Assembly (NCBI GenBank): GCA_965235115.1
Contig: OZ249447.1
Coordinates: 14,198,001-14,262,000 of the forward strand
Origin: Laetmonice hystrix
Taxonomy: Eukaryota
Length of the DNA: 64,000 nt
Direction: 5' to 3'
Shown here: piece after piece, positions 12,391 to 56,679 of the stretch
Numbering within the stretch: position 1 is the first letter of the stretch
Layout of the letters: each line of letters begins with the position of its first letter
Notes under the pieces: model-generated
Told to the model about the DNA's origin: nothing
Database searches by the model: none
Seen by the model: only the letters and a program-made list of their open reading frames with translations
Program-made: the position numbers and the translations under genes

Positions 12391-13781
12391 GGGCCATATG
12401 AATAAAAACTAGCATATGCTTTTACTACAAATTTTCAAGCAAATGCTTGGTCCGGTATGAATAAAACCAAGCAAATGCTTGGAAAAATGAAGCATATGCT
12501 ACTAGTAGAAGCAAATGCTTTTTAGTACCAACCTTTTGCTACAAAATGTAGCAAATGCTTGGATCGGTATGAATAAAGTAGCATAAGCCATTTACTTGGT
12601 AGTATATGCTTGGAATTTTCAAGGTAGGGTCAGACGTGGCTTGGGTTTTGAAGCAAGTGGTCAGAGTACTTTGCTATGGCTGCATTTATGCACGTTCGCG
12701 CTGAAAAGTTGTACATGCCTCGAAAGACATGTCGGCCAGGAACCTATCGAACATTTTACCGGTTCGACGAGGAGAACGTTGAGTGGTTGGCTAGTCATTT
12801 TTTGCCGGAGTCTTCAGAAACGCGCGGTGGATGTCTCTCAAACAAGGAAAAGATGGAGACTTTCTTCGTTACTTGGCGGATCCTGGATTTCAAGTTGGTG
12901 TTGGGGAGGACAAGGGTATACACCAGTCAACGGTGTGTAAAACATTCGCGAACGTCCTTACCCACGTTGTGGCAAAAGCTCAAATTTGGATTAAGTTTCC
13001 AGCAACCTTGCAGGATATATTAAGACAGGCCCAGCAACTGTGGCAAACTGAAAATGAAATACCAGGTGCAGTCGGTGCCATAGACTGTACGTATGTTAAA
13101 TTTTGAAGCCGGGTGGACGACAGGGGCATGGAGATGAATACATAAACAGAAAAGGTACAACGTCTATTAATGTGCAGGCGACATGTGATGCAATGGGCAT
13201 GATTTACTAGTGTTGATGCAAATTGGCCTGGCTCCGTGCATGATAGTAGGATCTGAAAGAATTCCGACGTTGGCCATGCCATGATCCACTCTCGCCATAG
13301 AGGCTTTCTTCTCGGTGATGAAGGATACGGGATAGCCCCATGGTTGATTACACCTTACAGCGATCCAGTTCTTCCTTTGGAAAGGACCTTCAACAAGATT
13401 CATTCTAAGGAAAGGGTTATCATAGAACGATGCTTTGGTCAAGTGAAAAGGCGCTTCCCAATTTTGAATGGGCGAGTTAGACTTCGACTGGTAAAAGTAC
13501 CAAGTGTAATTGTTGCCTGTTTCATGCTTCATAATATTGCCAAATACTTGGAGGACAAAGAATGGAACGATCGCTCTTGCACCCAGTGATCCCATTCAGG
13601 CGAAATTTGACATGGAAGTATTACCATCTAGCAAATGCTTGGAGTGTCAAGCAAAGCATTTGCAGCAAAAGGTCGCATTTATTCATATGAAACCAAGCAT
13701 TACCTTATACTTCGAGCAAATGCTGCTTCTACTTTTAAGCATTTGCTAGGAAGCATATGCTAGTTTTTATTCATATGGCCC
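12391..13781 (+). mobile_element. PIF/Harbinger-type DNA transposon, defective 1,391-bp copy
   Basis: Perfect 30-bp TIRs GGGCCATATGAATAAAAACTAGCATATGCT (12391-12420 and 13752-13781). Subterminal AGCAAATGCTT and TATGAATAAA repeats at both ends. Flanked by AT...AT. Carries a DDE_Tnp_4-type transposase remnant. Confidence 0.92.
12676..13589 (+). pseudogene. HARBI1-like (DDE_Tnp_4) transposase pseudogene
   Basis: Fragments across frames: FLRYLADPGFQ...GIHQSTVCK (HTH-like), GAIDCTYV (D), EYINRKG..SINVQATCD, WPGSVHDSRI, LLGDEGY (D), RVIIERCFGQVKRRFPIL (E), ACFMLHN. Frameshifts near 12862, 13100 and 13203; in-frame TGA near 13255 where Trp is expected. Confidence 0.9.
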
Positions 13782-21365: not shown

Positions 21366-24300
21366 ATGGGCGCTGGGGCGTCAGTGGATGAACAGGGAGG
21401 TGAGGCGGCTAGCGGCGCCGGTCGTCCGCCGACCGCTGTCACCAGCCGCCCGCCGAGTACGGCAGGGTCGGTGAGAGTCACACCAGTCGGCAGCAGAGCT
21501 CCCTCCCGCAGGGCTAGTGTCTCCAGTACGGCCACCTGGAGGTCTGCCTTCAGGAGTGGTAGCATCAACCAAGTGGGACTGAGAAAACTGCGTGCTGCCG
21601 CACTGGGTGAGTGGAGTTGAAAAAAGTTTGATCGAGGAATTCACCCACTTTTTATCATGCTTTGTTGTACATGTATACGCATTTCATAATTTAGTAAGGT
21701 GTATATCTTAGGAGAAATTGCTTCCAGCTATTTATTTGACTTTGAATTCCCTATTTGAAATGAAAGTTATGGATACTGGCCAAAGACTGATACCAGATAT
21801 TTTTTATAGGGCGGAAGAGTGCAGTGACTGTCACAATAGATAAGACTGGATTCTCACTACAGCACATCCGCATCTGTGAAGGTCAAGTAAGTACAGTCAC
21901 TTGAGTTATAGTTTAGATAACGATGGGAGAACGCCCCTCAAGACAATCGGAGATCAGCAGAATAAAGAGCATATAGACTAGATGCGGTCCCCAGTTGGAG
22001 AAAAAAGACTTTTTTCAGTCTGACTTTGTAAATGAACAAAACGACAAACACTATTTTGTATATGGTGGATCTAATGAGCATTGACTGAGGCATAACCTAA
22101 TACAAATGTATAATGTTTTGCACCAATCTATTATTTTCTATGACTTATACCAGAATATATCTGAAAGCAATTTCAGGAGATTTCTTTCCCAGTCATCCAC
22201 CAAGATTAAAATCTTATAATTTTACAAGAAGTGTCCATAGGTTAAAGGCAGTATTTGTTGTTGTTGCACAGGTTGTCTCTTTTACCTGGAACGACCAGGA
22301 AAGCCAGGGTTATAACGTGACGCAGGTGATACATGACGGTGAGCAGTACCGACCGGTCCCAGGCGGGTTCAATAGTGGGGCGGTGTGTCGGAGGGGTGGC
22401 TTCCAGCAACAGTTCAACCTCAAAGGGGAGTACAAGTTTGTCAGGTGAGTGGATTCTAGTACCTACTTACAACAACGCTGATTAGTATATACAAGAACAA
22501 GAATTAATACCATGACTTAAATCAGGGTATTTATGCTGAATTCCTCCATACGATGTATACATGATTGTGTATATATATATGCTGCAATCATCAAAGTTTG
22601 CCTCCTCTGTACTCCTCAGGCTGAAAGCAGCCATAGCTTTTGGTCTCTCCCCATAAAACCACAGAGATCAATAAGGGTCATCAATAATCTATCAATGGCA
22701 ATCAGGAATGTGTAAGGCAGGAAAGGGGAGCATGTACACGCAGCTTGTTGTTGGCAGGCCTACAGTCGGGTATACCTGACTGGGGTGTGCAAGAACTTGC
22801 CTGGCATGGTATGAGTACATACAGGCTTGGTTTAGTACATCGGTTGACACGGCTGGCACTGTAGGAATACATGGCTGGGCTTGTCTGACTAAATGACTAG
22901 CACTGTGGGAAGGGTAGGAGTACATGCAAGTAGGCCTATACTCGATGTATTATATTGTATATACTGTATCTGTGGAACACATGATATATATCTGTGGAAC
23001 ACACGATGGCACAGTTAAAGTGGAACAGACATCACAATTAACAGGAAATTTTGTACCAGATTGTAATTTGTCGTTGTTCTGTAAAGGAACGGTTGTTGTA
23101 CAACAACGTGAACTGTCTGTAATCCGTGATCAAAATGACCAATTCTCCCGGCCATCTGTCTGCCAGTCGCCTTCCTGCCAGAGCCCATCCGCCCGCCATG
23201 GATGCTATACGTCATCACGGGCAGCGCGCGATTCAAATTGTCCATATTTTTTTTTATCTTGGACACGTCTATACAACTAGAGATCTATCTAGATCAGTAA
23301 AGGTGCCTATGTGATGTCTGTCACACCCTGATAAGAGCTAGAGTAGGCCTATATCAAAGCGTAATTCGGTCTTAGCGACCGGCTCCAAATCTTGTACATT
23401 GTACAAGGGGTGGGTAGAGGGGCCCAGGGTGGAGTTAGGTATGTTTGGTTTGAACCCTTCTAGCAGAAATAAAATTACTTAGTGAGGGGAGGGGGGTGCA
23501 ACCACCGTACCCCCTCTTCTGGATCCGCACTGATATGGGACAACCTAAGGGCATGGCTAGCATTTTCCTCTATAGCCACTGTGGACTGGACCTATACCAA
23601 ATAAAGAAACCAAATAAATTTGACCAATGTAGAGTAAGACTTGTTTGCCCGTCTGCGTCCACAGTGCCGGGATACGGGTGACGCCTCTGACGGTCGAGGT
23701 GTTTGGACTGAAGGATGTAGAGGCTGAACTCAATGATGAAGGCTTTGCGCCTAAGATCATCCGTATAGATGAAGGTAGTGCCGTGATGTGGAAATGGACG
23801 GGCTGCAGTATCCCACACACCATCAACGAGGTCCGATACAATCACAAGCGAGGAGCCATGGTCCAGAAGGAAGTCGCAGAAAGGTACCTCAACAATCGGG
23901 GTTCCACAGGATTTATTGTGGATCTGCCTTCTTTAATGTGAACCTCACCAAAGCTATCCAGTTCAAACGTTCCTCAATTTCTGTTCCATGGCTTATTACA
24001 GTGCTTACGGTACACAAGGATAATGGTTACGGTACACTTGGATAATTTGGATGTGAAATCTTTTTTCTTCAGGCCAATTCCAACAAAGGCAGGAAGCTTC
24101 AGGAAAGATTTTCCGTGAGTATACACGAAACCTTGGAACCATTCTTACTTGAATATGACTCAATTGCTATCATAATCTTGTTTTGCACATTATTACATTA
24201 ACAATGTTCATATACATGTTACAATGAATGCCATGTGTGTCCTTCCAGGAAGCCGGGAATTTTCTATTTTCAAACAGAAGGAACTAGTACAGGGATAATG

Positions 24301-27300: not shown

Positions 27301-30300
27301 CACCATGCTAGGTCAGCAACATTCACCACTTTTTGAGGGTTTATCCAGGAGCAACAGACTGGAATTTAATGCCTTTTTGATGACAAGAAATATCATTCCC
27401 TTTAACAGTAGTCGCAAATTGTTCAAGAATTGAAGGGTGTTTTTTCTTCACAGACGGACATTGAATCGATTGTTCACAGAGAAGGGAGTGTACCATTTTA
27501 CAAGCAAATCTTTTCTTAAATCAACAAAGGTAAGTACAGGTTGTCCATCTTATGATGAATTTTTCTACTCAGTTAGACTGTGGTAACCGTTTAAACTTTC
27601 AGCTGTAAATACTTCAGCTCCTAGACTCTCTCCCAAACTGTGTGGTGGTCCATGTATAATTGTGAAATGGTTTTGGAAGGGAGAGCAGCGAAGTGATGAG
27701 TCTAGGATCAGTTCCATCCTGGTTGACGAGTCCAGTGACAGTGTAGTGGTCAGAGTCAGTTCACAGGGATTCCAACCTAAGACCACCAATATCACCAAGG
27801 TCAGTGACATTCAGATAACCTCATGCATTAGGTACCAAAAAACAAAGGTTCTGATATTAATAACGTATTGTGGGGCTGATGTTTACGTTTCTACCTTGGT
27901 TTTCAGGGTCAAAGTGTTCTCTGGACGTGGAAGGAATCAGGGGAGGAGGCCCACAACATTATCAACGTCAATCCTCCGGAGAGCGACGTGAGTCCCCCCT
28001 CCCACCCACTCCACCCCGATATGTCGTACAGAATTTGAACTTTAAACATCCTGGAAGTTCTTGTCGGGATAATGAGAAAACTGGGTGGATATTTGTTTCA
28101 GTCGCCTCTGAGCATCATCCAGGGCGGTCAGTCGTTTAACAGCGGTCGGCCTGTGGCCAGGAATAGCTTTCTCTACACCTTTGACGAGTCCGGCTCATAC
28201 TGCGTGGCCTCCCAGGGTGCACCTGGCTTTGCTGGCTCAGTCAAGGTCCTCAAAGGCAGTAAGTGTCGAGGTCAATGCGAGCTTAGTCCTAGTGGGTACT
28301 TAAATGGGGTCATATATTAATTTAGGGAATTGCTTACGAATATATTTCTTTCTGGCGTCAAGTTGTGTAATTTGTTTCTGGGGAGATGTGACGGTGCGTG
28401 CACTAACAACACAAGTATTCATACCGTTATGACCTAAAGACTTGTCATGACGTTGGTCACATGTCCTAACCTGCAGCTTTGATCTTCTGTTAGGTACAAG
28501 AACGACCACGCCATTTGTGTCAGGACGTGGTAGTAAGACAGGAGGAACCGTGGAGAAAAACTACACAATTCACCTGGAGTGTGAGACTCCAGGCAGCAGT
28601 ATTTTCTACACTCTGGATGGGTCATCACCCGACCTCAGCCGGGGCGCTGTTAAAGTAGGTGTTCACCCTGGAAATGGTAAAAGAATTCATTAACCCTTAG
28701 CGCTTACGTTGTTGGTAGACCCTACAGAGGTTCACTGACCTAAACGTATAGGTCTACTGTTAATATACTTGTATATTTCTTCCTCAGTTGTACAAGCCAG
28801 ACAAAGGAATCTGTCTGCGACAGTCTGGTCTATGTGTGCTGCGCGCCATCGCCACGTCAAAGAGCGCGCTCAACAGTGACGTCATGACGTCCAAACGATT
28901 CTGGGTGCTGCAAGGTGACGAGGACAACGCGTCTATCTCCTCTGGAGAGCCTGAGCAGGTCCCCGCCTCGGATAATGTAAGGGGTTACCATAAACATTCT
29001 TGTCATACTCAAGTCGGTGTTGATATTGTACTTGTATGACGACAAACAAAACACAAAAACAGACGTTTTAAGAATGAGTGACTGAAGCCATGTTTTCTGT
29101 ACCTTCAGGGGGCGTCCTGGCAGTGGTGGCAGAGCGCACCTGTTATCAAGGGTTGTTTTACAACGCCTGGTGTGATGGAGATTTTCTGGGAACAACCCCC
29201 CAAGGAATCACTTAACCTGGTCAAAGGGTACCAGGTACGTCTTCCTCCCCAAACCCCACCACAAATATATAAAAACCTGGCTTGGTGATTTATATACTTC
29301 TGATTCCGATGATTATAGATGACTTGAAAATTTCGGTTTACCTGTTCTAAAAATAAAGTTCACCTTATTCGCATGTTCTGCTGAGCTCTGGATCGCTATG
29401 GAATGAACGACTGTTCATGGATGTGTAGTCAAAGTATTACTGGTTCGATTGTCGGTTTGACAGTGACTTTTATTGTAGGTGTTTTTGAATGGTGTGACGT
29501 ATTGTGAAGTCTTCCCTGTACAACACAACTCGGTGAACATCGCCGGGCTGGCTGGTGGTCACCTGTATGAGGTGGTGGTCGAGGTCTACCCACGGGACAC
29601 CATGTACCTTCCACACAAGTCCAATAAACTAGTATGCAACTTCTTACTTCCGAATTTCTCTATTTAGAATTTGATGTGATGCCTAGAGTTCTTATAAAGT
29701 TGTTTGAATGTTCCTAAATGAAGGTTTTTATTATGTGAATGTACTGGAATGTCCCGCTAATGCATGCCCGTATGTTTAGGTCACATTCGGTTGTTGACTG
29801 TTTTGATGTTTTCCCTCCAGGTGATGAAGTGCCCTAAGACGACAGGTACTGGAGGACCTCTGTTGTCCATGGAGAGGACAGAAAAGCCAGATGTGCTGGC
29901 TATTGTGTGGATGGCCATCTCTACCCCAGACAGTCCCATCAAGGGTTATCGGGTTTACTTGAATGGACAGATGTGTGGCAGCCAGGTATAGGTTATATAT
30001 GTTTAGGTCTCCAGTAGTCTTAACAAACCATTAGCATTTCTCAACCCTTCGTAAGTTCTTGTGTAGCTTTTTTGAGGGGAAATTAAATTCAGATTTGATT
30101 TGGGGTGTGTGTATGTGAAGGAAGCCGATATAATTGATATGGTTTTATAACTTGGTGATATTAGACGTGTGAAGACATCTGAATGCAATATTTGTCGTGT
30201 TTGTAGGTGGTTCCCGATGAAAACAGTGACCGATGTAAAGTCGTTATTGAGGGTTGTAACCTGGAGAGTGTCTATCGTATCGTTGTGGCTGCCATTCCTA

Positions 30301-45300: not shown

Positions 45301-48300
45301 AACAATCTGCAGTTTGCTTCTAGGCAGCGCCTTTTTATGCCTTTGAATGTAAAAACCAGTAGATATATAAAAATATGCTCTTACGGACTGGTCATGTCTG
45401 CAATCTTCTTGCTTCCGCAACCCAAACAAAAACCCAGCAGTAATGTGTTTGTATTTTTCATTCTCAGGTTTATCTAAATGGCAAAAAGGTAGGAAACCAG
45501 CTGAGTAGCTCCCACAGAAAGGCCGTCATCCCGTGTAAACCCAAGCGTTGTTACAAGGTAAACTTGGTGGCTCTCAGCACAGACGCTAACTACGCCGACT
45601 CGGAGCTGTCCAACACTTTGATGATCACACCAGGCAGTGAGGGAGTGCGGTATATCGAGGGGTCGCCACTCAATGTGACCGAGCAGGACCTGGGGCCGGA
45701 TGACGACGGCGGGATCGAGCTGCCGGCCAGGGTGGTCAAGGTGACCGACACCTCCGTCCAACTGGACTGGGCTCCTTACAACGAGGTGGACGGGGTGGCT
45801 TACTACAGGGTGACGTGGAGCAGTGTGGCTCAGCCGGCTGTACGTATACTCCATCCAGTCTGTCACGTATAGACAGGGCAAAACCCGGGGAATGGGAAGG
45901 TTCAGGGGGTAGGAACTCCTATAGAACCGACTTGACTTTTTTCTGATTCCTTGAATTGATGCTTTTCTTCCTTTACCGACTTTCCCCCTTGGACCCCCCC
46001 CCCCCGCCCCCCAACATCTTGCTTAACATGTCAGTCTAATTACACCTACAGTATGGATCAACCGGCACAGATAGTATTCAGGGATGAAAGTTTTCAGGAA
46101 ATTTCCTGAAATCAGGAAATTTGAAAAAATCCCCCCCCCCCAAGAAATAACACCGAAAAAAGGAAATAGGCCTAGATCTATAGGCAAAAGAGGTAGGCCT
46201 AAGCCAAGGCTAAGTATTGCCCTGGACTGTGTGGTGGGCAATTTTATTTGTTAATATCAAATGAAACAATATCCCCTTCCAGGACGTTTTTTAATACCAT
46301 GCAGCTCAATATATCTCTACCTGCCAAAGTTCGTTTATAGATGGGGATATTAGAGTGTCTTAAACCCGTCCAGTGTCACGGGTGCCGCCATGCATAGGCC
46401 GGTCTGCCGGGGGTGCTGGTGTAGCTGTGGTCACATCGCTCACATAGACCGGCCCGCGTGGGCTGACTTCTACCGGCACGCGGTGGCGTCTGTCCCGTCT
46501 GGCAGGCACGGCCCCGTGTCGCTGTGGTGAGAGCGACTCACCTCAGGTAATGACTTCAGGCAAAACTGATGGTCAGGCAGCTGCGAAGCCCGTTGATTCA
46601 GGCTTGCCATTATGCCATATCCATGCGCGAGTTTTGCCTGAGCGCTCACTTAGTGAACGAGACTATAGTATAGACAGACCAGTCTGTCTAGTCCCGGCGT
46701 TGGCGATAGTGATTAGGCTGACGAACTACGCACCATCACAATGTCACTCCTCACAGGAAACTTGGTCAATTTAGTTCTATGAATCTGCCTAGTATATATG
46801 TCAGTAAGTTCTCATAATGTTTTCTTGCATATAAATTTGAGGATAATGGCATTACGTAAGTGGTTTTCACTGAAGTTTTGGGGTTGTCAGGACTTTTCAT
46901 TACATTTGTCGATCAGTGCAGGTGTCCTGATAAGACCGGAAGTGACAATAATATTCACAACATGAGTGGCAGGGCTGAACCACTCGACTCAGCGACTGTG
47001 TTGCTTGGCTGAGAGCCGCTGAGGGTCGTGACTGCTGAGGGTCAAGACTGATGGACAGCCTGTGTGGTTAGTCTAACACATGGAAGCTGTTTGACAACGT
47101 AATCGGGTGCATTTTGGACGCTAAAAGCCGATTGGATTCCAATGTTGGAGAGAGACGGCAGAGCCAGGCAGAGGTTGACAGCGAGTGACAGGCAAGCAAC
47201 AGCCTTGAACAGGGGCATGGACTGATGAGTGATGGAGTCTATCCATCAAATTTGCAGGGGTGGGGGGTGGCGACTAAATACTGAGGGCTAGGCCCTATAA
47301 TATTATAATAGCTAGGAGGCCTTATCGGATCATGATTGTCTGCTGTTCCTAGCCTGACTTTTTTTAAGGGGGGGGGGGGGGGGTAAGCCTTGGATGTGCG
47401 CATGAACAAATATTAATTATGGACATTGGCCCCCGCTGCTCCCCCCGGTCAGAATTTCAGGAAATTTTACAGCTGGCCACTTTCATCCCTGAGTATTACA
47501 ATTACAATGCATTATAATGAAGTACATTATAATATATGTGGTAGGAGAGGGAGGTGAAGCTGCCATCGGGTGAGAAGAGTTGTGTCCTACACAAGTGTTT
47601 CCCAGGAACCAATCATTTCCTGCGTGTGTTTGCCATGGGCCGAGATGAGAGGATACTGGATGTATCCCGACAGCTCACCGTACAGACCTGTGCCCCACCC
47701 GACACCCCGGTCGTGACTATCAGGTGAGGCACGCTCAACCTGTCAGTAAGACTGACCCAGTGGAACTGTCCGTGTTACCCGATACCCCTAATCTGATATT
47801 GTAAATGAACTGTCAGGCCAGGGCAAAAAGTAGCCGACCATTCTGTGCCACTGAAGGCAAGGATGTGAAGTGAATGAAGGTTAGCTTTCCATTTTGTGGC
47901 ACTGAATAATAGCCAACTGGTCATTTTGTAGCAAAGAGAGCCACTTTTCTATTTGGGGGCATTGAAGAGCAGCTTTTCTTTTTGTGGCATCGAGAGCCTG
48001 TTTCCCATTGTGTTTCAATGAGAGCCAACGTTCTAACATTATATTGCATTGACAGCCAGCTTTCCATTTTGTGTCAGGGCTTGTAACTTCCGTTACATCG
48101 CCATCCAGTGGGAGAAGCCGACGACGTACGGCGACACGTTGGTGACTGGTTACAAGGTGTACGTGAACGGTGTGGTGGAGTCGATCGTTGGACCAGACCA
48201 CAGCTCCTTCTCCTTCACCCAGGGCCACTGGTGCCGGGAGTATGCCTTCCAGGTCCAGGTATGACGACCGTCATTCTATATAACAACAAGAAAAAGGTTT

Positions 48301-51300
48301 AATCTCAGTCGTGTAGCAGAATGCAAACATAAAACTGAGGGATATTGAATTTGTAAAGGAACTCCAAAGAAACAAGAATGGATGAGATATTTTCCATTGA
48401 TGTTCAAACTGATCTGCGTGTAAGTGGACTGAGACAAAGGTTTTGTGTTTGTGTGTAGGCTCTAACAGCGAGTGAGAAGTTAAACAGCAAGCCGTCAGAC
48501 GCGCTAGTTGTGACGTGGCCGGGGGTACAACCACCCATCCTCCGCCGGGTACCTGCCGTGTCTGGGAACTCGATCAAGGTCACCTGGGACACACCAGCCA
48601 CCACGGACGGTATCAAGATCAAGATGTACAAGGTAGAATCTAGTTTTAACATCTTATCCAGAATCTGCCAGTCACACTTGAAGATTTGATAAAACCATAA
48701 GCTTTAATCCAGTGGTTCCTGATATAGCGGTATCCCACGAGATCTCTTTGAAATCGAGCGGGTTTCAAGACATCTTTCTTCAAGTGTCTCCCATGGAATG
48801 TGTATTAATATTTACAGATAATAGAAGGTTAAGTTGAAAGCAGATCGTAATCCTAAATTTAAGCCTGAGACTAATTTCAAGATTGCCTTTGGTCAGGTGT
48901 TGTGTGTGGAGGAGGAGAGCCAGCAGACGGTACAAGTCATCAGTCCCATCCATCCCAACACCACCGAGGCCGAACTTCAAAACCTCAAGGCTGGATCCTA
49001 CTTGATATACGCTGAAGTACACGTACGTACAGTAGTAGAAAGTATCGTTCAATAGTCGATTTAGATCAAGAGACGGCATAGATAAACCTACAAATGCCAA
49101 TATCCCTGTCGAATTTAGCGGCCCTAATCAGTTTTGTGAACACGTGGGAATTTGTGTTCGGAGAAAGGACTGTTTGATCTTTGAGACTGCCAGGAAATGT
49201 ATGGAATACGGAGATATTGCCTTTGACAGTCGATCGTTTGTGACAATGATCTGCTAATAACATGTTCAGGTTCATGGAACCAATGACATCGTCAAGTCGG
49301 AGGTCCTGAAGATTACACCGACCTTGACACCAGATGCGCCCCACATCGCCGTCACTGTCATTGGTTTGGAAGAGCGCCGACAGGTGGAGAAAGTAACCTG
49401 TGACCTCATTAACAAACGTGACAGGTGCGACATTTTGAGGTCAACCTTGTCAGTTGAGCTTGTCAATTGTGCGTTTGTTAGGCGGAAACTAACCCAGATA
49501 TCGTGACACCTTAACCTAGATGTAATAAAAAGTATTTCTGGAACAATCATCGTCAATTTGACGGTTTTAATCTCGTGAGTATGACAATCTAATTAAAATT
49601 AGATCTTGGTATTCTGCTTCTCGGCTGTGCTCATGCGAAATAACTAAGATCTAATTTTAATTAGATTGGTGAATATGGGTACTTATATTCCAGCTCTATC
49701 CACAGCTGTACAATCTTTTCATAAATTTACGTATTTTCATAAAGTTGTTATTATGTTCACATGTGGCTATTTTTTCTATTGATATTTTTATTCCCCCCTC
49801 TTCTAAGGCTCATAAATTTCTTAACAAATCGCGAAGTGACACAGACTCTGCGAGCAACAGACGAGAACCAGTTGATCGGGAAGGTGACAGAGGACCTCGC
49901 TCACATTGAGGACATGCTGGACGACTGCCTGGCCTCTCTGAGTCACTACACAGGTAAGGTACCGGACCTCTCTAAGTCACTACACAGGTAGGGTACCGGA
50001 CCTCTCTCAGTCATTACACAGGTAGGGTACCGGACCTCTCTAAGTCACTACACAGGTAGGGTACCGGACCTCTCTCAGTCACTACACAGGTAGGGTACCG
50101 GACCTCTCTCAGTCATTACACAGGTAGGGTACCGGACCTCTCTAAGTCACTACACAGGTAGGGTACCGGACCTCTCTCAGTCACTACACAGGTAGGGTAC
50201 CGGACCTCTCTCAGTCATTACACAGGTAGGGTACCGGACCTCTCTAAGTCACTACACAGGTAGGGTACCGGACCTCTCTCAGTCACTACACAGGTAGGGT
50301 ACCGGACCTCTCTCAGTCATTACACAGGTAGGGTACCGGACCTCTCTAAGTCACTACACAGGTAGGGTACCGGACCTCTCTCAGTCACTACACAGGTAGG
50401 GTACCGGACCTCTCTCAGTCACTACACAGGTAGGGTACCGGACCTCTCTCAGTCACTACACAGGTAGGGTACCGGACCTCTCTCAGTCACTACACAGGTA
50501 GGGTACCGGACCTCTCTCAGTCACTACACAGGTAGGGTACCGGACCTCTCTCAGTCACTACACAGGTAGGGTACCGGACCTCTCTAAGTCACTACACAGG
50601 TAGGGTACCGGACCTCTCAGTCACTACACAGGTAGGGTACCGGAACTCTCTCAGTCACTACACAGGTAGGGTACCAGACCTCTCTCAGTCACTACACAGG
50701 TAGGGTACCGGACCTCTCTCAGTCACTACACAGATAGGGTACCGGACCTCTCTCAGTCACTACACAGGTAGGTTACCGGACCTCTCTCAGTCACTACACA
50801 GGTAGGGTACCGGACCTCTCTCAGTCACTACACAGGTAGGGTACCAGACGTCTCAGTCACTACACAGGTAGGGTACCGGACCTCTCTCAGTCATTACACA
50901 GGTAGGGTACCGGACCTCTCTCAGTCACTACACAGGTAGGGTACCGGACCTCTCTCAGTCACTACACAGATAGGGTACCGGACCTCTCTCAGTCACTACA
51001 CAGGTAGGGTACCGGACCTCTCTCAGTCACTACACAGGTAGGGTACCAGACGTCTCAGTCACTACACAGGTAGGGTACCGGACCTCTCTCAGTCATTACA
51101 CAGGTAGGGTACCGGACCTCTCTCAGTCACTACACAGGTAGGGTACCAGACCTCTCTCAGTCACTACACAGGTAGGGTACCGGACCTCTCTCAGTCACTA
51201 CACAGGGTACCGGGCCTCTCTCAGTCACTACACAGGTAGGGTACCGGACCTCTCAGTCACTACACAGGTATGATACCGGACCTCTCTCAGTCACTACACA

Positions 51301-54300
51301 GGTAGGGTATCGGACCTCTCTCAGTCACTACACAGGTACGGTACCGGACCTCTCTCAGTCACTACACAGGTAGGGTACCAGACGTCTCAGTCACTACACA
51401 GGTAGGGTACCGGACCTCTCTCAGTCACTACACAGGTAGGGTACCGGACCTCTCTCAGTCACTACACAGGTAGGGTACCGGACCTCTCTCAGTCACTACA
51501 CAGGTAGGGTACCGGACCTCTCTCAGTCACTACACAGGTAGGGTACCGGACCTCTCTCAGTCACTACACAGGTAGGGTACCGGACCTCTCTCAGTCACTA
51601 CACAGGTAGGGTACCGGACCTCTCTAAGTCACTACACAGGTAGGGTACCGGACCTCTCAGTCACTACACAGGTAGGGTACCGGAACTCTCTCAGTCACTA
51701 CACAGGTAGGGTACCAGACCTCTCTCAGTCACTACACAGGTAGGGTACCGGACCTCTCTCAGTCACTACACAGATAGGGTACCGGACCTCTCTCAGTCAC
51801 TACACAGGTAGGTTACCGGACCTCTCTCAGTCACTACACAGGTAGGGTACCGGACCTCTCTCAGTCACTACACAGGTAGGGTACCAGACGTCTCAGTCAC
51901 TACACAGGTAGGGTACCGGACCTCTCTCAGTCATTACACAGGTAGGGTACCGGACCTCTCTCAGTCACTACACAGGTAGGGTACCGGACCTCTCTCAGTC
52001 ACTACACAGATAGGGTACCGGACCTCTCTCAGTCACTACACAGGTAGGGTACCGGACCTCTCTCAGTCACTACACAGGTAGGGTACCAGACGTCTCAGTC
52101 ACTACACAGGTAGGGTACCGGACCTCTCTCAGTCATTACACAGGTAGGGTACCGGACCTCTCTCAGTCACTACACAGGTAGGGTACCAGACCTCTCTCAG
52201 TCACTACACAGGTAGGGTACCGGACCTCTCTCAGTCACTACACAGGGTACCGGGCCTCTCTCAGTCACTACACAGGTAGGGTACCGGACCTCTCAGTCAC
52301 TACACAGGTATGATACCGGACCTCTCTCAGTCACTACACAGGTAGGGTACCGGACCTCTCTCAGTCACTACACAGGTACGGTACCGGACCTCTCTCAGTC
52401 ACTACACAGGTAGGGTACCAGACGTCTCAGTCACTACACAGGTAGGGTACCGGACCTCTCTCAGTCACTACACAGGTAGGGTACCAGACGTCTCAGTCAC
52501 TACACAGGTACGGTACCGGACCTCTCTCAGTCACTACACAGGTAGGGTACCAGACGTCTCAGTCACTACACAGGTAGGGTACCGGACCTCTCTCAGTCAC
52601 TACACAGGTAGGGTACCAGACGTCTCAGTCATTACACAGGTAGGGTACCGGACCTCTCTCAGTCACTACACAGGTAGGGTACCGGACCTCTCTCAGTCAC
52701 TACACAGGTAGGGTACCGGACCTCTCTCAGTCACTACACAGGTAGGGTACCAGACGTCTCAGTCACTACACAGGTAGGGTACCGGACCTCTCTCAGTCAC
52801 TACACAGGTAGGGTACCAGACCTCTCTCAGTCACTACACAGGTAGGGTACCGGACCTCTCTCAGTCACTACACAGGGTACCGGACCTCTCTCAGTCACTA
52901 CATAGGTAGGGTACCGGACCTCTCAGTCACTACACAGGTATGATACCGGACCTCTCTCAGTCACTACACAGGTAGGGTACCGGACCTCTCTCAGTCACTA
53001 CACAGGTACGGTACCGGACCTCTCTCAGTCACTACACAGGTAGGGTACCAGACGTCTCAGTCACTACACAGGTACGGTACCGGACCTCTCTCAGTCACTA
53101 CACAGATAGGGTACCGGACCTCTCTCAGTCACTACACAGGTAGGGTACCGGACCTCTCTTAGTCACTACACAGGTAGGGTACCGGACCTCTCTCAGTCAC
53201 TACACAGGTAGGGTACCGGACCTCTCTCAGTCACTACACAGAGTACCGGACCTCTCAGTCACTACACAGGTACGGTACCGGACCTCTCTCGGTATAAATC
53301 GAAGTAAAGTAAATAAGAATGGTTCCTGCAGCATACTTTATGTCTTATTCTATTTTTCTTGTCTTAGGTCATCTCCTGGCACACGTGAGTTGGACATGTC
53401 CCCAGAGTAACCCTGATATAAAGGTCACAGGGTACAAAGTTCTGGTGGACGGAAAGCAGTATGGAACCACCCTACATGCTGGCGTACAGAATGTCCGAGT
53501 CAAGGTAAGCACTTCGCAGATTCAAAGAGCTCTGGTATATGCGTACATGTAGTATTGGTACCGGTAGAGGGACATTTACTAATTAGTAGATTCATATATT
53601 GTTACATTCAATAGTAAATTACTTGACGGTCCATATATATTTAGAAAATTATTTCATACATTGTGGATGGCAAAACATTTTTGTTAAAGGGAGTCGTAAA
53701 ATTCATTTTTTTCGATTTATGGCAGTCTTAGAAACATATGATTCGCATACCTTGGACTCCCGCCAGTAACATCATGTGAGACTGTTATGGCCCAGCGACC
53801 AGTATTTAGTAAGGAAAATATGCCAAATCTCTCGCAAATACGTAGCTCAGAATTAGCGAACGGCCCACAGGATATTTGAGTTGGCCGCGGTCGGGCGATG
53901 ATCACGCGTGATCACGCGACTTCCGGGTGTGGAAGGGAATCTCCCTCTAGTCTAGCGTTGACCTAAATACCGCATGTACACCCGGAAGTCACGTGATCAC
54001 GCGTCATCATCGCCCGACCGCGGCCAACTCAAATATCCTGTGGGCCGCTCGCTAATTCTGAGCTACGTATTTGCGAGAGATTTGGCATATTTTCCTTACT
54101 AAATACTGGTCGCTGGGCCATAACAGTCTCACATGATGTTACTGGGAGTCCAAGGTATGCGAATTATAATGTTTCTAAGACTGCCATAAATCGAAAAAAA
54201 TGAATTTTACGACTCCCTTTAAGGTCATACGCTCCCTTACCTCATAACTTAATAACATAATGAGATTTATTGCTAGTCTTTTAGCCAATGGTCAGAAATT

Positions 54301-56679
54301 TTTCTTCTGCATTGATTGCTATTCGAGATAGATATTGATAAAGGGCGTGTTCATTTCTATTCTATTATTGCCATGGTTTATTTTGACCACTGGTAAGGAG
54401 ACGGCTAGAGAGTGAATAATTTCGGTAACTTTCAGCTCGGTCTGCAGCAGCCCAGTCACCGCCTCAGTATGGTGTCTGTCAGCGACCACCCCCACACCAC
54501 CAGCGTTCAGTCAAATATTGTCGAGTTATTGACCGACCCCTTCAAGCCCTTCTCATTTTTCTCATATCTGGATTCCACGTAAGTATCATATTATCTGTTT
54601 CAAATCCAGTTACATTTGTACTTGAAACGGAATGTAATTCCTTTTTCCTTTTCAAACAAAATACCCCAAAACACATGGACGCTGTCTAAGTAGAGGACTG
54701 AGTGATTGTATTTAGGGAATTGATCGGTGTTTCTCGGCCAGGGGTCCCAGAACCAGCGGCCTGTACTCGCAGACGTTGGCCCAGGAGCGTAAATCCCGTC
54801 GCCCTATCAACCAGGGCCTCCTGAAGCGGCATGTACCGCCTCCTGCAGCCGCCGTCATGGACGTGTTTGAGGGCGAGTACCACCCTCTATTCCCGCCCTC
54901 GGGACCTCGCAGCACAACGGCGCTCCTCTTCTGGGCCAAGTGGTCAGTCGTTTCTGATTACTGTCATTCCATTTTCCATTTACAAAACTGAAACTCATTG
55001 GTTATGGTCAAAGGGCAGCCAATATATTCGACAGTTAAGGTTTCTTGTGCATGACCTTTTCTCATATTTACTATTTTGGCCTCAAGCTTTCTTATAAAAG
55101 AAGAATTATCGCACAAATCTTTCAGAAGATTCTGGATAATTACCGCGTATATAAAGACTTTGTGACGGAACATTATTTCTCTCTTTGATGTTTTATTACA
55201 TAGGAACCCGGCCTCAAGGAAGGCACTTGGATGGTTTGTCAGGTTCGCCAAAAGTAACTCGGCCCAGAATGAGTTTATAGCCGTGGCCTGCACTGCACAC
55301 GACCCAACAGCCAATGACCGGCAAGAGTTGGTGCACGTGATCACAGAGAATGGTTGGCGGGATGACAAGTGTGTGCGTCACGTGACCAGCCATTGTGCTT
55401 CCCCCAGCACTATAGGCTCGGAGTATGTGAAAAGTACGTATTGAAGGATCAGTCTTTTGGGATGCATACGATCTGCGGAATCGTGCATAAAGAGTACACG
55501 TTTTTTAATTATGGCTTCTAAAGTTACAAATACAACACGAGACGGTACTTTTGTCTGGATTGGTCCAGGAGCGTAAATATTGCATACGTAGGTTTGATTT
55601 CGATTTTCACGTTTTTTTGTGTTCAGGCCGTAATGGTGACGTTTCTAATGAGCCGTCGTCTGACGTCGCCGATCTGTTTGGTATTGTTGGTGTCCCAATG
55701 ATTGTCCTCGTACACCCGGGAGGTAAGCGGATATTCGGCGTCACTAATTTTGAATAGTCCCATTTGTAAATCACTTCCATGTAGGTATAGAGTGTCGTGT
55801 ATGGAGGAAACCATACTGGGGTATTCGGGCGATGATGTTAATGTAAACAAAGGTGTTATTGTTATAGCAGCCGATATTGCCGACACTATATTTAGTAACA
55901 CCCCCACTGTCAGTAATTAGGTGTGATCAAGAGGCTTATTTTGTGGAGGAATCGGCTTATATTTGTGCACTCTGTTTATATTTGTGCACTCTGTTTATAT
56001 TTGTGCACTCTGTTTATATTTGTGCACTCTGTTTATATTCGTGCACTCTGTTTATATTTGTGCACTTTGTTTATATTTGTGCTCTCTGTTTTGTTTCCTC
56101 AGATTATATTGCGTGGAAGGGTCGCTACTGTGCCTTCGATTACATCTCCTACGAGAACGTATTGAAATATGTTTTTGCGCAGGCGTCAGGACAAGGGGCC
56201 TCGCCTCCCGATCCTTGGGACACAAACATTGATGTGGACGCGCTTGGTGAGTAATTCTCATTAATAAATTCATAATTATAACAAAATGAAAACCACCTGT
56301 AATTTATAGCTGCACTGTCGCAGCGGGACGCGTCATTTAAAAAAACAACTTCTTTTCTACCAAAGATGGCGTTTCAAAACGAGGCCTGAGTGAGTCCCAG
56401 ATGTTGATTCATCGACCAACAAACAACATGCGACTTGGAGGCGGTAATACTTCCACCGTACACATGAACGGTAACCGACCCACCTCGGCCAAAAAACCTC
56501 TCTTCCGGAAATCTAGCGGAAAGAAGTCGAAAGATAAACTGTCGATTAGCACGCGGCCTTTCTCCGCGTCAGGGGCCATACGGAGTCCGTACGCTACCAA
56601 CGTCCTGGCCGAGGAAGGGTTAATAGCTGGACCGAAGAGACGAGCCAAATCGGGAAAGAAACTCAATGGCAACTATTGA
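21366..56679 (+). CDS. Very large modular protein (~3,540 aa, ~59 exons): myristoylation motif, 7 cupredoxin-like repeats, CHB_HEX_C/Fn3-associated-type domain, ~16 FN3 domains, degenerate thioredoxin-like domain
   Basis: Hand-spliced, phase-consistent GT-AG exons: 21366-21606, 21810-21886, 22272-22444, 23665-23883, 24073-24114, 24249-24432, 24647-24718, 24842-24876, 24986-25143, 25288-25431, 25929-26089, 26366-26482, 26834-26998, 27136-27311, 27454-27529, 27689-27799, 27907-27987, 28102-28258, 28494-28654, 28788-28976, 29109-29234, 29479-29631, 29821-29985, 30207-30303, 31401-31556, 31956-32000, 32312-32389, 33938-34708, 35738-35920, 37440-37594, 37843-38009, 38154-38273, 38462-38603, 38732-39084, 39261-39381, 39573-39770, 39911-40157, 40334-40483, 40636-40737, 41115-41207, 41315-41500, 41717-42639, 43219-43369, 43526-43745, 44250-44442, 45468-45839, 47545-47723, 48078-48258, 48459-48632, 48897-49016, 49270-49424, 49808-49953, 53368-53504, 54436-54578, 54742-54942, 55204-55433, 55627-55722, 56103-56246, 56366-56679 (10,626 nt, no internal stop). 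Weakest junctions are the acceptors at 27689 and 35738; linkage across 33938-37440 is less certain than the domain exons. Confidence 0.82.
21810..28258 (+). other. Exons encoding seven tandem cupredoxin/plastocyanin-like repeats
   Basis: A recurrent pattern V.(I/V)...GF.P..(I/V).I..GD.(V/I).W.W....H(N/T)(I/V)...F...G.Y.(Y/F) is seen seven times, e.g. VHVTDTGFEPKVVTIHPRDRVWWVWQDAKRQHNII...FDLPGVYYY. Confidence 0.72.
28494..28976 (+). other. Exons encoding a chitobiase/beta-hexosaminidase C-terminal (Fn3-associated)-type domain
   Basis: TTPFVSG...IHLECETPGSSIFYTLDGSSP...LYKPDKGICL...LRAIATSK..LNSDVMT matches the TP...IYYTLDGS.P...Y...I.....A.A....S.V pattern. Confidence 0.7.
30308..31148. repeat. 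Intronic minisatellite of interspersed 23-bp and 36-bp units, interrupted at ~30811-31005
   Basis: GTCTTACATAGTCAGAACCAGAG (23) and GTCTACCTGTGGTTGAATACATAGTCAGAACCAGAG (36). It begins 4 nt after the donor at 30304. Confidence 0.95.
30830..31005 (+). mobile_element. tRNA-derived SINE-like insertion
   Basis: A-box-like GGTGGCCTAGTGG (~30840-30852) and B-box GGTTCGATTCC (30908-30918), followed by non-tRNA sequence and an A-rich end. No CCA or acceptor-stem closure seen; TSD not evident. Confidence 0.6.
32615..32986. repeat. Intronic minisatellite, 30-bp unit, ~12 copies
   Basis: Unit CTGTGACGTACCTGGTCACTGTGACCCTAT with point variants; CTGTGAC occurs twice per unit. Confidence 0.93.
40811..40851. 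repeat. Perfect 20-bp-arm palindrome with 1-nt loop
   Basis: ATCCCATGTCTGATAACGTA-A-TACGTTATCAGACATGGGAT. Confidence 0.9.
42671..43118. mobile_element. MITE with ~140-bp TIRs and TTAA TSD (Kolobok-like termini)
   Basis: TTAA|AGGCAGGGTAAACACCC...GGGTGTTTACCCTCCCT|TTAA; arms about 42671-42812 and 42984-43118 are near reverse complements. Confidence 0.82.
44531..45342 (+). mobile_element. Possible Helentron-associated (DINE-1/HINE-like) non-autonomous element
   Basis: CCGTCCGTACGTACGTCCGT microsatellite near the 5' end, a short inverted pair ACGCCTT / AAGGCGT, and a terminal mini-hairpin AGGC-AGC-GCCT followed by a T-run. Boundaries are approximate. Confidence 0.35.
49585..49668. repeat. 23-bp perfect inverted repeat with 38-bp spacer
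   Basis: CAATCTAATTAAAATTAGATCTT ... AAGATCTAATTTTAATTAGATTG; each arm is itself nearly palindromic. Confidence 0.8.
49933..53290 (+). repeat. ~3.35-kb tandem array, 34-bp unit (~100 copies) made of exon 3' end plus splice donor
   Basis: Unit CCTCTCTCAGTCACTACACAG|GTAGGGTACCGGA. The first 21 nt match the exon end CCTCTCTGAGTCACTACACAG (20/21) and the last 13 nt match the intron start GTAAGGTACCGGA (12/13). Confidence 0.97.
53688..54218. mobile_element. Long-palindrome MITE (531 bp, ~243-bp arms) with TTAA TSD (Kolobok-like termini)
   Basis: TTAA|AGGGAGTCGTAAAATTCA...TGAATTTTACGACTCCCT|TTAA; arms about 53688-53930 and 53979-54218 are near-perfect reverse complements with a ~48-bp spacer. Confidence 0.9.
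54742..56246 (+). other. Exons encoding a thioredoxin-like domain lacking CxxC
   Basis: TALLFWAKWNPASRKAL aligns to the V.L.FWA.WCxxCR pattern. VADLFGIVGVPMIVLVHPGG aligns to the cis-Pro segment pattern A..FGV.GIP...LID..G. Confidence 0.68.
55958..56090. repeat. Intronic minisatellite, 19-bp unit, ~7 copies
   Basis: TTATATTTGTGCACTCTGT repeated; it ends at the polypyrimidine tract of the acceptor at 56102. Confidence 0.92.

What the first reader, a model, noticed from the sequence alone, without database searches (positions are those of the whole stretch)
21366..56679. Giant myristoylated cupredoxin-FN3-thioredoxin protein: candidate undescribed ciliary scaffold
Seen: one open spliced frame of about 3,540 aa. 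It begins MGAGAS (M-G-x-x-x-S) in a strong Kozak context, and I see no signal peptide or transmembrane segment. It has 7 cupredoxin-like repeats, a CHB_HEX_C-type domain, about 16 FN3 domains, a thioredoxin-like domain, and a basic tail with RPTSAK and RPFSAS. Known: N-myristoylation with UNC119 delivery targets proteins to cilia; intracellular FN3 arrays occur in scaffolds such as RIM-binding proteins; a CHB_HEX_C-type domain occurs in the cilia-linked DZANK1. I do not recognise this architecture as a named gene. Both redox-type folds appear to have lost their catalytic ligands. Inference: a membrane-anchored, elongated structural or adaptor protein of cilia or flagella.
Basis: partly seen in the sequence, partly recalled or inferred. 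Interest (0 to 1): 0.82.

Follow-up and report, generated by a model that had tools for sequence, protein, structure and literature searches.

The report
Giant lipid-anchored beta-sandwich scaffold protein gene
This is a real, single-copy gene for a roughly 3,500-residue protein conserved as an uncharacterised protein in molluscs, annelids, nemerteans, brachiopods, echinoderms and hemichordates; it looks like a membrane-tethered structural rod, and the proposed link to cilia is plausible but untested.

Summary
My homology-guided model has 55 GT-AG coding exons (21366-56679, + strand) and about 3,517 aa. It starts MGAGAS in an A(-3)/G(+4) context.

Confirmed parts:
- seven cupredoxin-like repeats;
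- a CHB_HEX_C_1 domain;
- 15 detectable FN3 domains, with room for two more;
- a roughly 370-aa non-conserved spacer;
- a TlpA/ResA-type thioredoxin-like domain;
- a basic tail with RPTSAK and RPFSAS.

Full-length collinear orthologues of 3,200-4,000 aa exist in at least 25 species of Spiralia and Ambulacraria. All are annotated as uncharacterised, and no paper was found. None turned up in chordates, arthropods, nematodes or cnidarians.

The N-terminal MG[TSAN]GAS is conserved. It fits the published small-residue motif of high-affinity UNC119 cargo.

The copper ligands are lost: Cys to Ser, His to Leu, Met deleted. The thioredoxin site reads N-P-A-S here. Most orthologues instead keep a monothiol W-C-x-x-S plus an upstream Cys/His cluster. 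This genome and Dimorphilus lack both.

No RNA data could be obtained, so one-gene continuity rests on orthologues, splice phase and codon bias. Ciliary localisation remains inference.

The parts
21366..21606 (+). Coding exon 1 (aa 1-81). Start codon with A at -3 and G at +4, then MGAGAS and a Ser/Pro/Arg/Gly-rich segment without a hydrophobic core. Ends at a gtgagt donor.
   Evidence: In-frame codon bias is the best of the three sense frames (0.264); one antisense frame scores level (0.268). The N-terminal MG[TSAN]GAS is conserved in orthologues.
21810..28258 (+). Exons 2-16 (aa 81-803): seven tandem cupredoxin-like repeats at aa 85-166, 180-266, 284-372, 390-487, 505-584, 599-677 and 704-789.
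   Evidence: Family-trained repeat profile, E-values 1e-15 to 1e-30. Orthologue profile hits are collinear. Pfam Cupredoxin_1 and Copper-bind hit orthologues. The repeat profile hits blue copper proteins in the PDB, E = 5.6e-6. The structure model has pLDDT 89.6 and Foldseek returns cupredoxin proteins.
28494..29012 (+). Exons 17-18 (aa 803-931): CHB_HEX_C_1 / Fn3_assoc-type domain followed by a short acidic stretch. The 3' end of exon 18 may be 28976 instead of 29012.
   Evidence: Pfam on window:28496-28654 gives CHB_HEX_C_1 at 34.3 bits (cut-off 22) and Fn3_assoc at 27.8 bits. The same domains hit orthologues. Junction scoring.
29109..31556 (+). Exons 19-23 (aa 932-1164): two FN3 domains (aa 947-1009 and 1038-1108) and a conserved segment ending at a gtaagt donor.
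33938..34708 (+). Exon 24 (aa 1164-1421): spacer rich in acidic residues, Gln, Pro and Gly, with no detectable homology. It lies inside a 316-codon open frame (33793-34740).
   Evidence: Splice phase is compatible with exon 23. In-frame codon bias is +0.152 per codon, against a maximum of -0.089 in 2,000 intron samples. The only listed indel variant inside it is 9 bases, so in frame. No Pfam hit. No transcript evidence.
35738..35920 (+). Exon 25 (aa 1421-1482): spacer continued. Predicted from phase, splice sites and codon bias only.
37440..37594 (+). Exon 26 (aa 1482-1533): basic KKKRRRRR patch and the end of the spacer. Its length (155 nt, remainder 2) restores the frame between the two conserved halves.
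37843..49022 (+). Exons 27-46 (aa 1534-2999): the main FN3 array, with 12 units detected. It includes the 923-nt exon 41717-42639.
   Evidence: Pfam fn3 on window exons, 70.4 and 27.7 bits. Family FN3 profile. Collinear orthologue profile hits and junction scoring.
49270..49953 (+). Exons 47-48 (aa 3000-3100): a conserved non-FN3 segment between FN3 units.
   Evidence: the consensus shows a conserved LEERRQLE-type stretch.
49954..53367 (+). Intron 48, filled with tandem repeats. It is not coding in this model.
   Evidence: Repetitive open frames. High G+C at 50-54 kb. Junction 49953/53368 is the best-scoring one. Noted earlier by the scan as s1-317230.
53368..54578 (+). Exons 49-50 (aa 3100-3193): the last FN3 unit, then the segment that carries a Cys/His cluster in most orthologues but not here.
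54751..55722 (+). Exons 51-53 (aa 3193-3366): thioredoxin-like domain. The active-site position reads F-W-A-K-W-N-P-A-S across intron 54943-55203. The cis-Pro loop G-V-P-M is present. The acceptor may be 54742 instead of 54751, and junction 55433/55627 has the alternative 55426/55569.
   Evidence: Orthologue structure model and fold searches. Profile search of the PDB.
56103..56679 (+). Exons 54-55 (aa 3366-3517 plus the stop codon at 56677-56679): basic tail with RPTSAK, L-S-I-S-T-R-P-F-S-A-S and S-P-Y.
   Evidence: The tail motifs [IL]S[VI]xxRP[YF]SA and RPxS are conserved across phyla.
32614..32987 (.). Intronic 30-bp minisatellite of 12.3 copies. It is open in all three frames and is excluded from the coding model.
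   Evidence: Raised contig depth at this place.

Best explanation
The region is one single-copy gene. It is the orthologue of an unnamed giant protein family of Spiralia and Ambulacraria.

The product is cytosolic and is most likely N-myristoylated on Gly2, so one end sits on a membrane. The rest is a largely non-catalytic string of about 25 beta-sandwich modules: 7 copper-less cupredoxin-like repeats, 1 CHB_HEX_C domain and 15-17 FN3 domains. A roughly 370-residue disordered spacer interrupts this string. The protein ends in a thioredoxin-fold head and a basic tail with conserved Arg(-3) serine sites.

It would work as a long membrane-to-partner tether or adaptor, of the order of 100 nm if extended. 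The C-terminal thioredoxin-like head and phosphorylatable tail would be the partner-binding end.

Shown: gene structure by homology, domain folds, loss of ligands, and conservation of the N- and C-terminal motifs.

Inferred: myristoylation, cytosolic topology, tether function and physical length.
For: One gene:
- Orthologue profile hits are collinear from profile position 45 to 3431.
- At least 25 full-length orthologues of 3,200-4,000 aa contain both halves.
- The three spacer exons are phase-compatible and show codon bias in the predicted frame.
- The gene is single copy in the 627-Mb assembly.

Lipid anchor: MG[TSAN]GAS is at the N-terminus of 18 of 28 family models. It is internal, after non-conserved acidic extensions, in 4 more.

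No signal peptide or membrane span is apparent.

Non-catalytic modules:
- The alignment to plastocyanin shows Cys to Ser, His to Leu and Met deleted.
- The thioredoxin site reads N-P-A-S here.

Folds.

Conserved tail motifs.
Against: - No transcript evidence for this species. No RNA run was listed, and the three runs that hold the locus are DNA.
- The spacer exons have no homologues.
- Some RefSeq mollusc models extend the N-terminus upstream of the MGxGAS. Such isoforms could not be myristoylated. In the window the frame is open upstream to an acceptor at 21329.
- Most orthologues keep a monothiol CxxS and a Cys/His cluster, so the family may have a redox or metal-dependent activity that a purely structural reading ignores.
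- No expression, localisation or interaction data exist for any member.
Confidence: 0.6

Rival explanations
1. The myristoylated protein is delivered by UNC119 and released by ARL3 into cilia or flagella. There it links the ciliary membrane to the axoneme or organises a periodic structure.
For: - Residues 3-5 are small in all orthologues (T/S/A/N, then G, then A). This is the published requirement for high-affinity UNC119A cargo, which ARL3 releases at the cilium or the immune synapse (PMC8246649).
- The window's first six residues fit this pattern.
- All taxa holding the gene have ciliated epidermis or ciliary bands. They include the compact-genome Dimorphilus and Intoshia, which nevertheless keep a gene of more than 3,000 aa. 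The biology of these taxa is from general knowledge.
Against: - No localisation, expression or proteome evidence was found.
- No orthologue was detected in chordates or cnidarians, which also have motile cilia.
- The same motif also directs cargo to non-ciliary sites.
- Foldseek hits to ciliary central-apparatus chains have TM of only 0.13-0.14 and reflect generic beta-sandwich arrays.
Confidence: 0.3
2. The protein is an active redox or metal-handling (copper or zinc) protein. The thioredoxin-like, Sco/TlpA-type head and the Cys/His cluster would bind or transfer a metal or form mixed disulfides. The cupredoxin-like repeats would take part.
For: - W-C-x-x-S and an upstream C-x-H-x2-H...G-C-C cluster are conserved in 17 of 19 orthologues.
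- The structural neighbours are TlpA, ResA, StoA, SCO2 and MauD. TlpA acts on copper proteins.
- The first copper-ligand His (H-N motif) is kept in four of the seven repeats in the window; it is invariant or nearly so across orthologues in repeats 3, 5 and 7.
Against: - In this genome both the Cys and the Cys/His cluster are absent, and no hidden exon supplies them. The gene nevertheless stays intact and otherwise conserved.
- Three of the four type-1 copper ligands are lost in the repeats.
- A CxxS site cannot complete a dithiol-disulfide exchange cycle.
Confidence: 0.1
3. The model merges two genes: an N-terminal cupredoxin/CHB_HEX_C/FN3 gene ending near 31556, and a C-terminal FN3/thioredoxin gene starting near 37440-37843.
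For: - The 6.3-kb interval 31556-37843 has no homology to any orthologue.
- There is no RNA evidence.
- Fragmentary models of the C-terminal half alone exist in Lingula and Dimorphilus.
Against: - Every near-complete orthologue model joins both halves through a non-conserved spacer of similar length.
- The direct junction would shift the frame, and the predicted spacer exons restore it exactly.
- The spacer exons carry in-frame codon bias.
- The N-terminal and C-terminal motifs co-occur across phyla.
Confidence: 0.08
4. It is a secreted or cell-surface adhesion protein. FN3, cupredoxin (ephrin-like), CHB_HEX_C and TlpA-type domains are typical of extracellular or periplasmic proteins.
For: The domain types are mostly known from extracellular or bacterial surface proteins.
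Against: - There is no hydrophobic N-terminal or internal segment.
- The conserved start is M-G-x-G-A-S.
- The spacer and the tail are highly charged and carry basophilic-kinase-type serine motifs.
Confidence: 0.04

Closest known systems
Unnamed orthologous family, for example Owenia fusiformis 'unnamed protein product' (P0167), Haliotis rufescens LOC124136325 (P0169), Ptychodera flava XP_070557721 (P0005) and Strongylocentrotus purpuratus LOC577931 (P0164)
   Same: - Full-length collinear homology: 51% identity to Owenia, 46% to Haliotis, 37% to Ptychodera and 30-33% to echinoderms over about 3,100 aligned residues.
- The same seven repeats, CHB_HEX_C domain, FN3 array, thioredoxin-like domain, N-terminal MGxGAS and tail motifs.
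   Different: This genome's copy, like that of Dimorphilus, lacks the W-C-x-x-S cysteine and the upstream Cys/His cluster. The spacer is not alignable.
Type-1 blue copper proteins (plastocyanin, amicyanin, pseudoazurin; Pfam Copper-bind and Cupredoxin_1)
   Same: The repeat profile matches them by sequence at E = 5.6e-6 to 1e-4 over the whole domain. The fold match is supported. The first ligand His in an H-N motif is kept in several repeats.
   Different: - The Cys, second His and Met ligands are replaced or deleted.
- There are seven tandem copies inside a cytosolic giant protein.
- No copper site is expected.
TlpA/ResA/StoA/DsbE-type thioredoxin-like proteins (AhpC-TSA/Redoxin clan)
   Same: Best structural matches: Foldseek E of about 2e-7, TM by target 0.6-0.79. 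Swiss-Prot models and Atlas clusters agree. The beta-alpha-beta core, the F-W-x-x-W lead-in and the cis-Pro loop are present.
   Different: - No CxxC. Orthologues have CxxS and this genome has N-P-A-S.
- An inserted low-confidence loop.
- Eukaryotic and cytosolic, and fused to an FN3 rod.
Intracellular FN3-array scaffolds (RIM-binding proteins; titin/obscurin-type muscle giants)
   Same: Long cytosolic arrays of FN3 modules acting as rulers or adaptors (general knowledge). The Pfam Ig_RIMBP2 model scores on several units.
   Different: Pfam scans of orthologues found no SH3, Ig or kinase domains. The cupredoxin, CHB_HEX_C and thioredoxin modules and the lipid-anchor motif are not found in those families.
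High-affinity myristoylated UNC119 cargo (NPHP3, GNAT1, LCK)
   Same: Gly2 followed by small residues at positions 3-5 and Ser6. The motif rule is taken from PMC8246649.
   Different: There is only a sequence-motif resemblance. Neither myristoylation nor UNC119 binding has been tested, and the rest of the protein is unrelated.

Membership tests
Unnamed Spiralia/Ambulacraria giant protein family (LOC577931-like) | Collinear homology over the whole length | tested here: met
   Profile hits are in order from position 45 to 3431 of 3449. Identity to orthologues is 30-51% over about 3,100 columns.
Unnamed Spiralia/Ambulacraria giant protein family (LOC577931-like) | N-terminal M-G-[TSAN]-G-A-S and C-terminal R-P-[YF]-S-A tail motif | tested here: met
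   MGAGAS at 21366. L-S-I-S-T-R-P-F-S-A-S in the last exon. Orthologue comparison.
Unnamed Spiralia/Ambulacraria giant protein family (LOC577931-like) | Monothiol W-C-x-x-S in the thioredoxin-like domain plus an upstream Cys/His cluster (present in 17 of 19 orthologues) | tested here: not met
   W-N-P-A-S here, and the cluster is absent. No alternative exon lies in the 172-bp intron. The same double loss occurs in Dimorphilus P0174, so this is a lineage variant and not an exclusion.
Type-1 copper cupredoxins | Cupredoxin beta-sandwich with detectable sequence similarity | tested here: met
   PDB profile hits to a blue copper protein, plastocyanin and amicyanin. Pfam hits on orthologues. Foldseek results.
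Type-1 copper cupredoxins | His-Cys-His-Met copper ligand set | tested here: not met
   In the alignment to plastocyanin, Cys becomes Ser, His becomes Leu and the Met lies in a deleted stretch. Only the first His is kept.
Thioredoxin superfamily, TlpA/ResA-like | Thioredoxin fold with a cis-Pro loop | tested here: met
   Tested on the closest orthologue (P0167:2959-3181): pLDDT 77, Foldseek E of about 2e-7. The window sequence aligns without an indel at F-W-x-x-W and has G-V-P-M at the cis-Pro loop.
Thioredoxin superfamily, TlpA/ResA-like | CxxC redox-active site | tested here: not met
   N-P-A-S in the window and C-x-x-S in orthologues.
N-myristoylated, UNC119 high-affinity cargo | Gly2, small residues at positions 3-5 and Ser/Thr at position 6 | tested here: met
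   The window reads M-G-A-G-A-S and orthologues read M-G-[TSAN]-G-A-S. The rule is from PMC8246649.
N-myristoylated, UNC119 high-affinity cargo | Actual myristoylation, UNC119 binding and ARL3-specific release | not testable with these tools
   This needs biochemical assays.
Ciliary or flagellar structural proteins | Presence in cilia (proteome, localisation) or a phyletic profile matching motile cilia | tested here: inconclusive
   Found only in Spiralia and Ambulacraria. None was detected in chordates or cnidarians. No literature or proteome mention was found.
RIM-binding proteins | SH3 domains flanking FN3 units | tested here: not met
   Pfam scans of two full-length orthologues returned no SH3 domain.

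The most novel reading that the evidence does not exclude
The family would be a previously unrecognised, UNC119/ARL3-delivered tether between the ciliary membrane and the axoneme, or a ruler roughly 100 nm long. It would be specific to the locomotory multiciliated epithelia and larval ciliary bands of Spiralia and Ambulacraria.

It would have been built in an early bilaterian from bacterial-type surface modules (Cupredoxin_1, CHB_HEX_C, TlpA-like redoxin). Its C-terminal Cys/His cluster and monothiol thioredoxin would form one redox- or metal-sensing switch. That switch has been lost as a unit in this lineage and in Dimorphilus.
Probability: 0.2. Interest if true: 0.75.

Novelty: new variant of a known kind. 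Interest (0 to 1): 0.55.

Why it matters
A protein of about 3,500 residues is kept single-copy and collinear across at least seven animal phyla (orthologue protein models from Mollusca, Annelida, Nemertea, Brachiopoda, Orthonectida, Echinodermata and Hemichordata). Even very small genomes such as Dimorphilus and Intoshia keep it. It must therefore do something important.

It has no name, no paper and no orthologue in the standard model animals, which is probably why it has escaped study.

It combines an invariant lipid-anchor motif with degenerate redox folds used as building blocks. This gives a concrete case of how enzyme folds are recruited as structural modules.

If the ciliary reading is right, it would be a lineage-specific component of the ciliary bands that drive marine larvae. 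The co-loss of the cysteine and the Cys/His cluster offers a natural experiment on what the C-terminal module does.

Tried and rejected
**RNA evidence.** Two run searches listed no RNA library. The three runs that hold the locus cover introns evenly and show no splice joints, so they are DNA. That used the single read-laying run.

**Gene models.** Four dynamic-programming models gave 3,011 to 4,333 aa. They either invented micro-exons, ran into introns or skipped the spacer. I replaced them with per-junction scoring against an orthologue profile.

**Minisatellite.** An apparent exon at 32630-32918 was rejected because it lies in a 30-bp minisatellite that is open in all frames.

**Pfam on single exons.** This found no cupredoxin or thioredoxin family, because the exons are shorter than the domains. 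Those two assignments rest on orthologues and on self-built profiles.

**ESM Atlas.** The feature search scored below any useful level, 0.76, with a bacterial Copper-bind cluster as best hit.

**Literature.** Searches for twelve orthologue locus names and for domain-word combinations found nothing relevant.

**DZANK1.** The claim that DZANK1 has a CHB_HEX_C domain could not be checked.

**N-terminal extensions.** The extensions in Haliotis, Babylonia and Mytilus models are not conserved between genera and have no counterpart in the window.

**Foldseek hits to ciliary chains.** Hits to ciliary central-apparatus chains were set aside as generic beta-sandwich arrays, with TM of 0.13-0.14.

**Not done.**
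- A complex prediction with UNC119, because no acceptable UNC119 sequence was available and a lipid cannot be modelled.
Full report
**What is in the sequence**

The + strand between 21.3 and 56.7 kb holds many short open frames of coding character. The ATG at 21366 sits in the context aacagaATGg and opens M-G-A-G-A-S. The exon ends at a gtgagt donor at 21607.

Pfam finds fn3 directly on window exons: 70.4 bits on 41719-42639 and 27.7 bits on 38732-39085. It finds CHB_HEX_C_1 on 28496-28654 at 34.3 bits against a cut-off of 22.

**Relatives**

An exhaustive HMMER search with the largest exon returned full-length proteins of about 3,000-3,700 aa. They come from Ptychodera, Bulinus, Anneissia and Intoshia, with fragmentary models from Lingula and Dimorphilus.

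Two further searches collected at least 25 near-complete orthologues of 3,200-4,000 aa. They come from gastropods, bivalves, annelids (Owenia, Dimorphilus), a nemertean (Lineus), hemichordates, sea stars, sea urchins and crinoids.

- All are annotated 'uncharacterized', 'hypothetical' or only 'fibronectin type-III domain-containing'.
- AFDB clusters add two more unnamed members.
- No chordate, arthropod, nematode or cnidarian orthologue appeared. The next hits are generic FN3 proteins such as tenascin.
- Literature searches with twelve locus names and with domain words found nothing.

**Gene model**

A profile built from 19 orthologues hits the window's open frames strictly in order. It runs from profile position 45 at 21815 to position 3431 at 56589. 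There is a single hole, profile 1116-1452, which corresponds to window 31556-37843.

I enumerated every GT/AG pair around each pair of neighbouring hits and scored the joined peptides against the profile. Most junctions had one clear winner.

The upstream block has 23 exons and leaves one base over. The downstream block has 29 exons and is in frame. A direct join would therefore shift the frame.

Three exons in the hole restore the frame exactly: 33938-34708, 35738-35920 and 37440-37594.

- They have canonical splice sites.
- Exon 33938-34708 lies in a 316-codon open frame.
- All three show positive codon bias only in the predicted frame: +0.15, +0.31 and +0.43 per codon. The maximum in 2,000 intron samples was -0.09.
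- The only listed indel variant inside exon 24 is 9 bases long. Indels outside exons are 1, 2 or 14 bases.

The full model has 55 exons, 10,554 nt and 3,517 aa:

- Exons 1-23: 21366-21606, 21810-21886, 22272-22444, 23665-23937, 24249-24432, 24647-24750, 24986-25143, 25288-25431, 25929-26089, 26366-26482, 26834-26998, 27136-27311, 27454-27529, 27680-27799, 27907-27987, 28102-28258, 28494-28654, 28788-29012, 29109-29234, 29479-29631, 29821-29985, 30207-30303, 31401-31556.
- Exons 24-26 (spacer): 33938-34708, 35738-35920, 37440-37594.
- Exons 27-55: 37843-38009, 38154-38273, 38462-38603, 38732-39084, 39261-39381, 39573-39770, 39911-40157, 40334-40483, 40636-40737, 41115-41207, 41315-41500, 41717-42639, 43219-43369, 43526-43745, 44250-44442, 45468-45839, 47545-47723, 48078-48258, 48459-48632, 48897-49022, 49270-49424, 49808-49953, 53368-53504, 54436-54578, 54751-54942, 55204-55433, 55627-55722, 56103-56246, 56366-56679.

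Uncertain by a few codons are the junctions 23937/24249, 24750/24986, 29012/29109, 54578/54751 and 55433/55627.

No RNA library could be found, and the runs that hold the locus are genomic. The spacer exons and the one-gene claim therefore rest on orthologues, phase and codon bias.

The gene is single copy in the 627-Mb assembly.

**Domains**

*Cupredoxin-like repeats.* A repeat profile grown from the family finds exactly seven units in the model, at aa 85-789. It also finds seven in each of 18 orthologue models; the N-terminally truncated Owenia model shows six.

- Pfam scores Cupredoxin_1 and Copper-bind on orthologues.
- A profile of the repeat hits a blue copper protein (E = 5.6e-6), plastocyanins and amicyanins in the PDB.
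- An AlphaFold2 model of repeats 5-7 plus CHB_HEX_C has pLDDT 89.6.
- Foldseek returns nitrite reductase, multicopper oxidases, ceruloplasmin and factor VIII, and in AFDB blue-copper, uclacyanin, CuA and EfeO-type proteins.
- In the printed alignment the first ligand His (H-N motif) is retained. The ligand Cys aligns with Ser, the second His aligns with Leu, and the Met falls in a deleted stretch.

*FN3.* A family-trained FN3 profile finds 15 units. Gaps at aa 2453-2623 and 2998-3096 could each hold one more.

*Thioredoxin-like domain.* The C-terminal domain was modelled on the Owenia orthologue (pLDDT 77, pTM 0.78).

- Its best structural matches are TlpA, StoA, ResA, DsbE, MauD and SCO2-type thioredoxin folds.
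- The profile also hits thioredoxins and glutaredoxins by sequence.

Across intron 54943-55203 the window reads F-W-A-K-W-N-P-A-S-R-K. In 17 of 19 orthologues the same columns read F-W-T-x-W-C-x-x-S, and the cis-Pro loop G-V-P-T is kept (G-V-P-M here).

About 60 residues upstream, the same 17 orthologues carry a Cys/His cluster of the form F-Y-C-x-H-x2-H...G-C-C. The window and Dimorphilus lack both elements. The 172-bp intron hides no exon that could supply them.

The two elements are thus lost together, which suggests they act as one site. The thioredoxin module is 'dead' in this lineage but probably not in the family.

**Ends of the protein**

M-G-[TSAN]-G-A-S opens 18 of 28 family models. 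In four mollusc models it is internal, behind acidic low-complexity extensions. Those extensions are not conserved between genera and are absent from the window.

Conservation of the Met itself argues that it is the ancestral start.

Positions 3-5 are always small. This is the published rule for high-affinity UNC119A cargo, which ARL3 releases at cilia or the immune synapse (PMC8246649).

The tail motifs [IL]-S-[VI]-x-x-R-P-[YF]-S-A and R-P-x-S are conserved from molluscs to echinoderms. Both have Arg at -3, the pattern of basophilic kinase sites; that reading is an inference.

No hydrophobic segment suggests a signal peptide or a membrane span. The top hydropathy window is the thioredoxin cis-Pro strand.

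**Interpretation**

The best-supported reading is a cytosolic, lipid-anchored, mainly structural rod.

- It has roughly 25 beta-sandwich modules with a disordered spacer.
- Its conserved C-terminal head and tail engage a partner.
- If fully extended it would span on the order of 100 nm. This is an inference from about 4 nm per module.

The ciliary version of this idea is reasonable for three reasons: the UNC119-type N-terminus, the fact that all holders of the gene have ciliated epithelia, and retention of the gene in the miniature genomes of Dimorphilus and Intoshia.

It has no direct support. It is weakened by the absence of detectable orthologues in chordates and cnidarians.

An active redox or metal role for the C-terminal module is possible in other species but unlikely here.

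**Verdict**

- The structural interpretation is supported.
- The ciliary localisation is open.
- The gene is an unstudied, widely conserved family, not a named one.

Noticed in passing
window 54560-54578, 54751-54790 and 54930-55215: The monothiol W-C-x-x-S cysteine and an upstream Cys/His cluster (C-x-H-x2-H...G-C-C) are conserved in 17 of 19 orthologues. Both are missing here and in Dimorphilus P0174. The joint loss suggests they form one functional site.
   Followed up: partly
window 32614-32987: A 30-bp minisatellite of 12.3 copies at 82% match inside intron 23. It is open in all three frames and has raised contig depth, so it mimics an exon in naive gene models.
   Followed up: yes
window 49954-53367: Intron 48 is almost entirely G+C-rich tandem repeats that translate into repeated GTGPLSVTTQ-like frames. 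The scan already noted it (s1-317230) as copies of an exon end plus donor. They could act as decoy or alternative donors.
   Followed up: no
window 5402-5665, 6073-6285, 7609-7962 (+ strand): Exons of an upstream alpha/beta-hydrolase gene. Pfam Hydrolase_4 scores 38-45 bits per exon. It looks like a monoglyceride-lipase-type enzyme.
   Followed up: partly
window 12587-13586 (+ strand): Open frames of a Harbinger/PIF-type transposase (DDE_Tnp_4, 64 bits) lie between the hydrolase gene and the giant gene.
   Followed up: partly
Orthologues P0169, P0170, P0178, P0172 (Haliotis, Babylonia, Mytilus): These RefSeq models place 75-613 acidic low-complexity residues in front of an internal M-G-x-G-A-S. 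They are either alternative first exons that would abolish myristoylation or annotation over-extensions. The extensions are not conserved between genera.
   Followed up: partly
Whole gene; orthologue P0167 (Owenia), P0174 (Dimorphilus): The window's product is closest to the annelid Owenia (51% identity). It shares a P-P-S-G-P lead-in to the thioredoxin site with the two annelids only. The genome is therefore probably an annelid's. This is a guess from one gene.
   Followed up: no
window 32100-38050: The three DNA runs of one sample show dense heterozygosity, with SNPs every 50-150 bases and many small indels. The individual or population is highly polymorphic.
   Followed up: no
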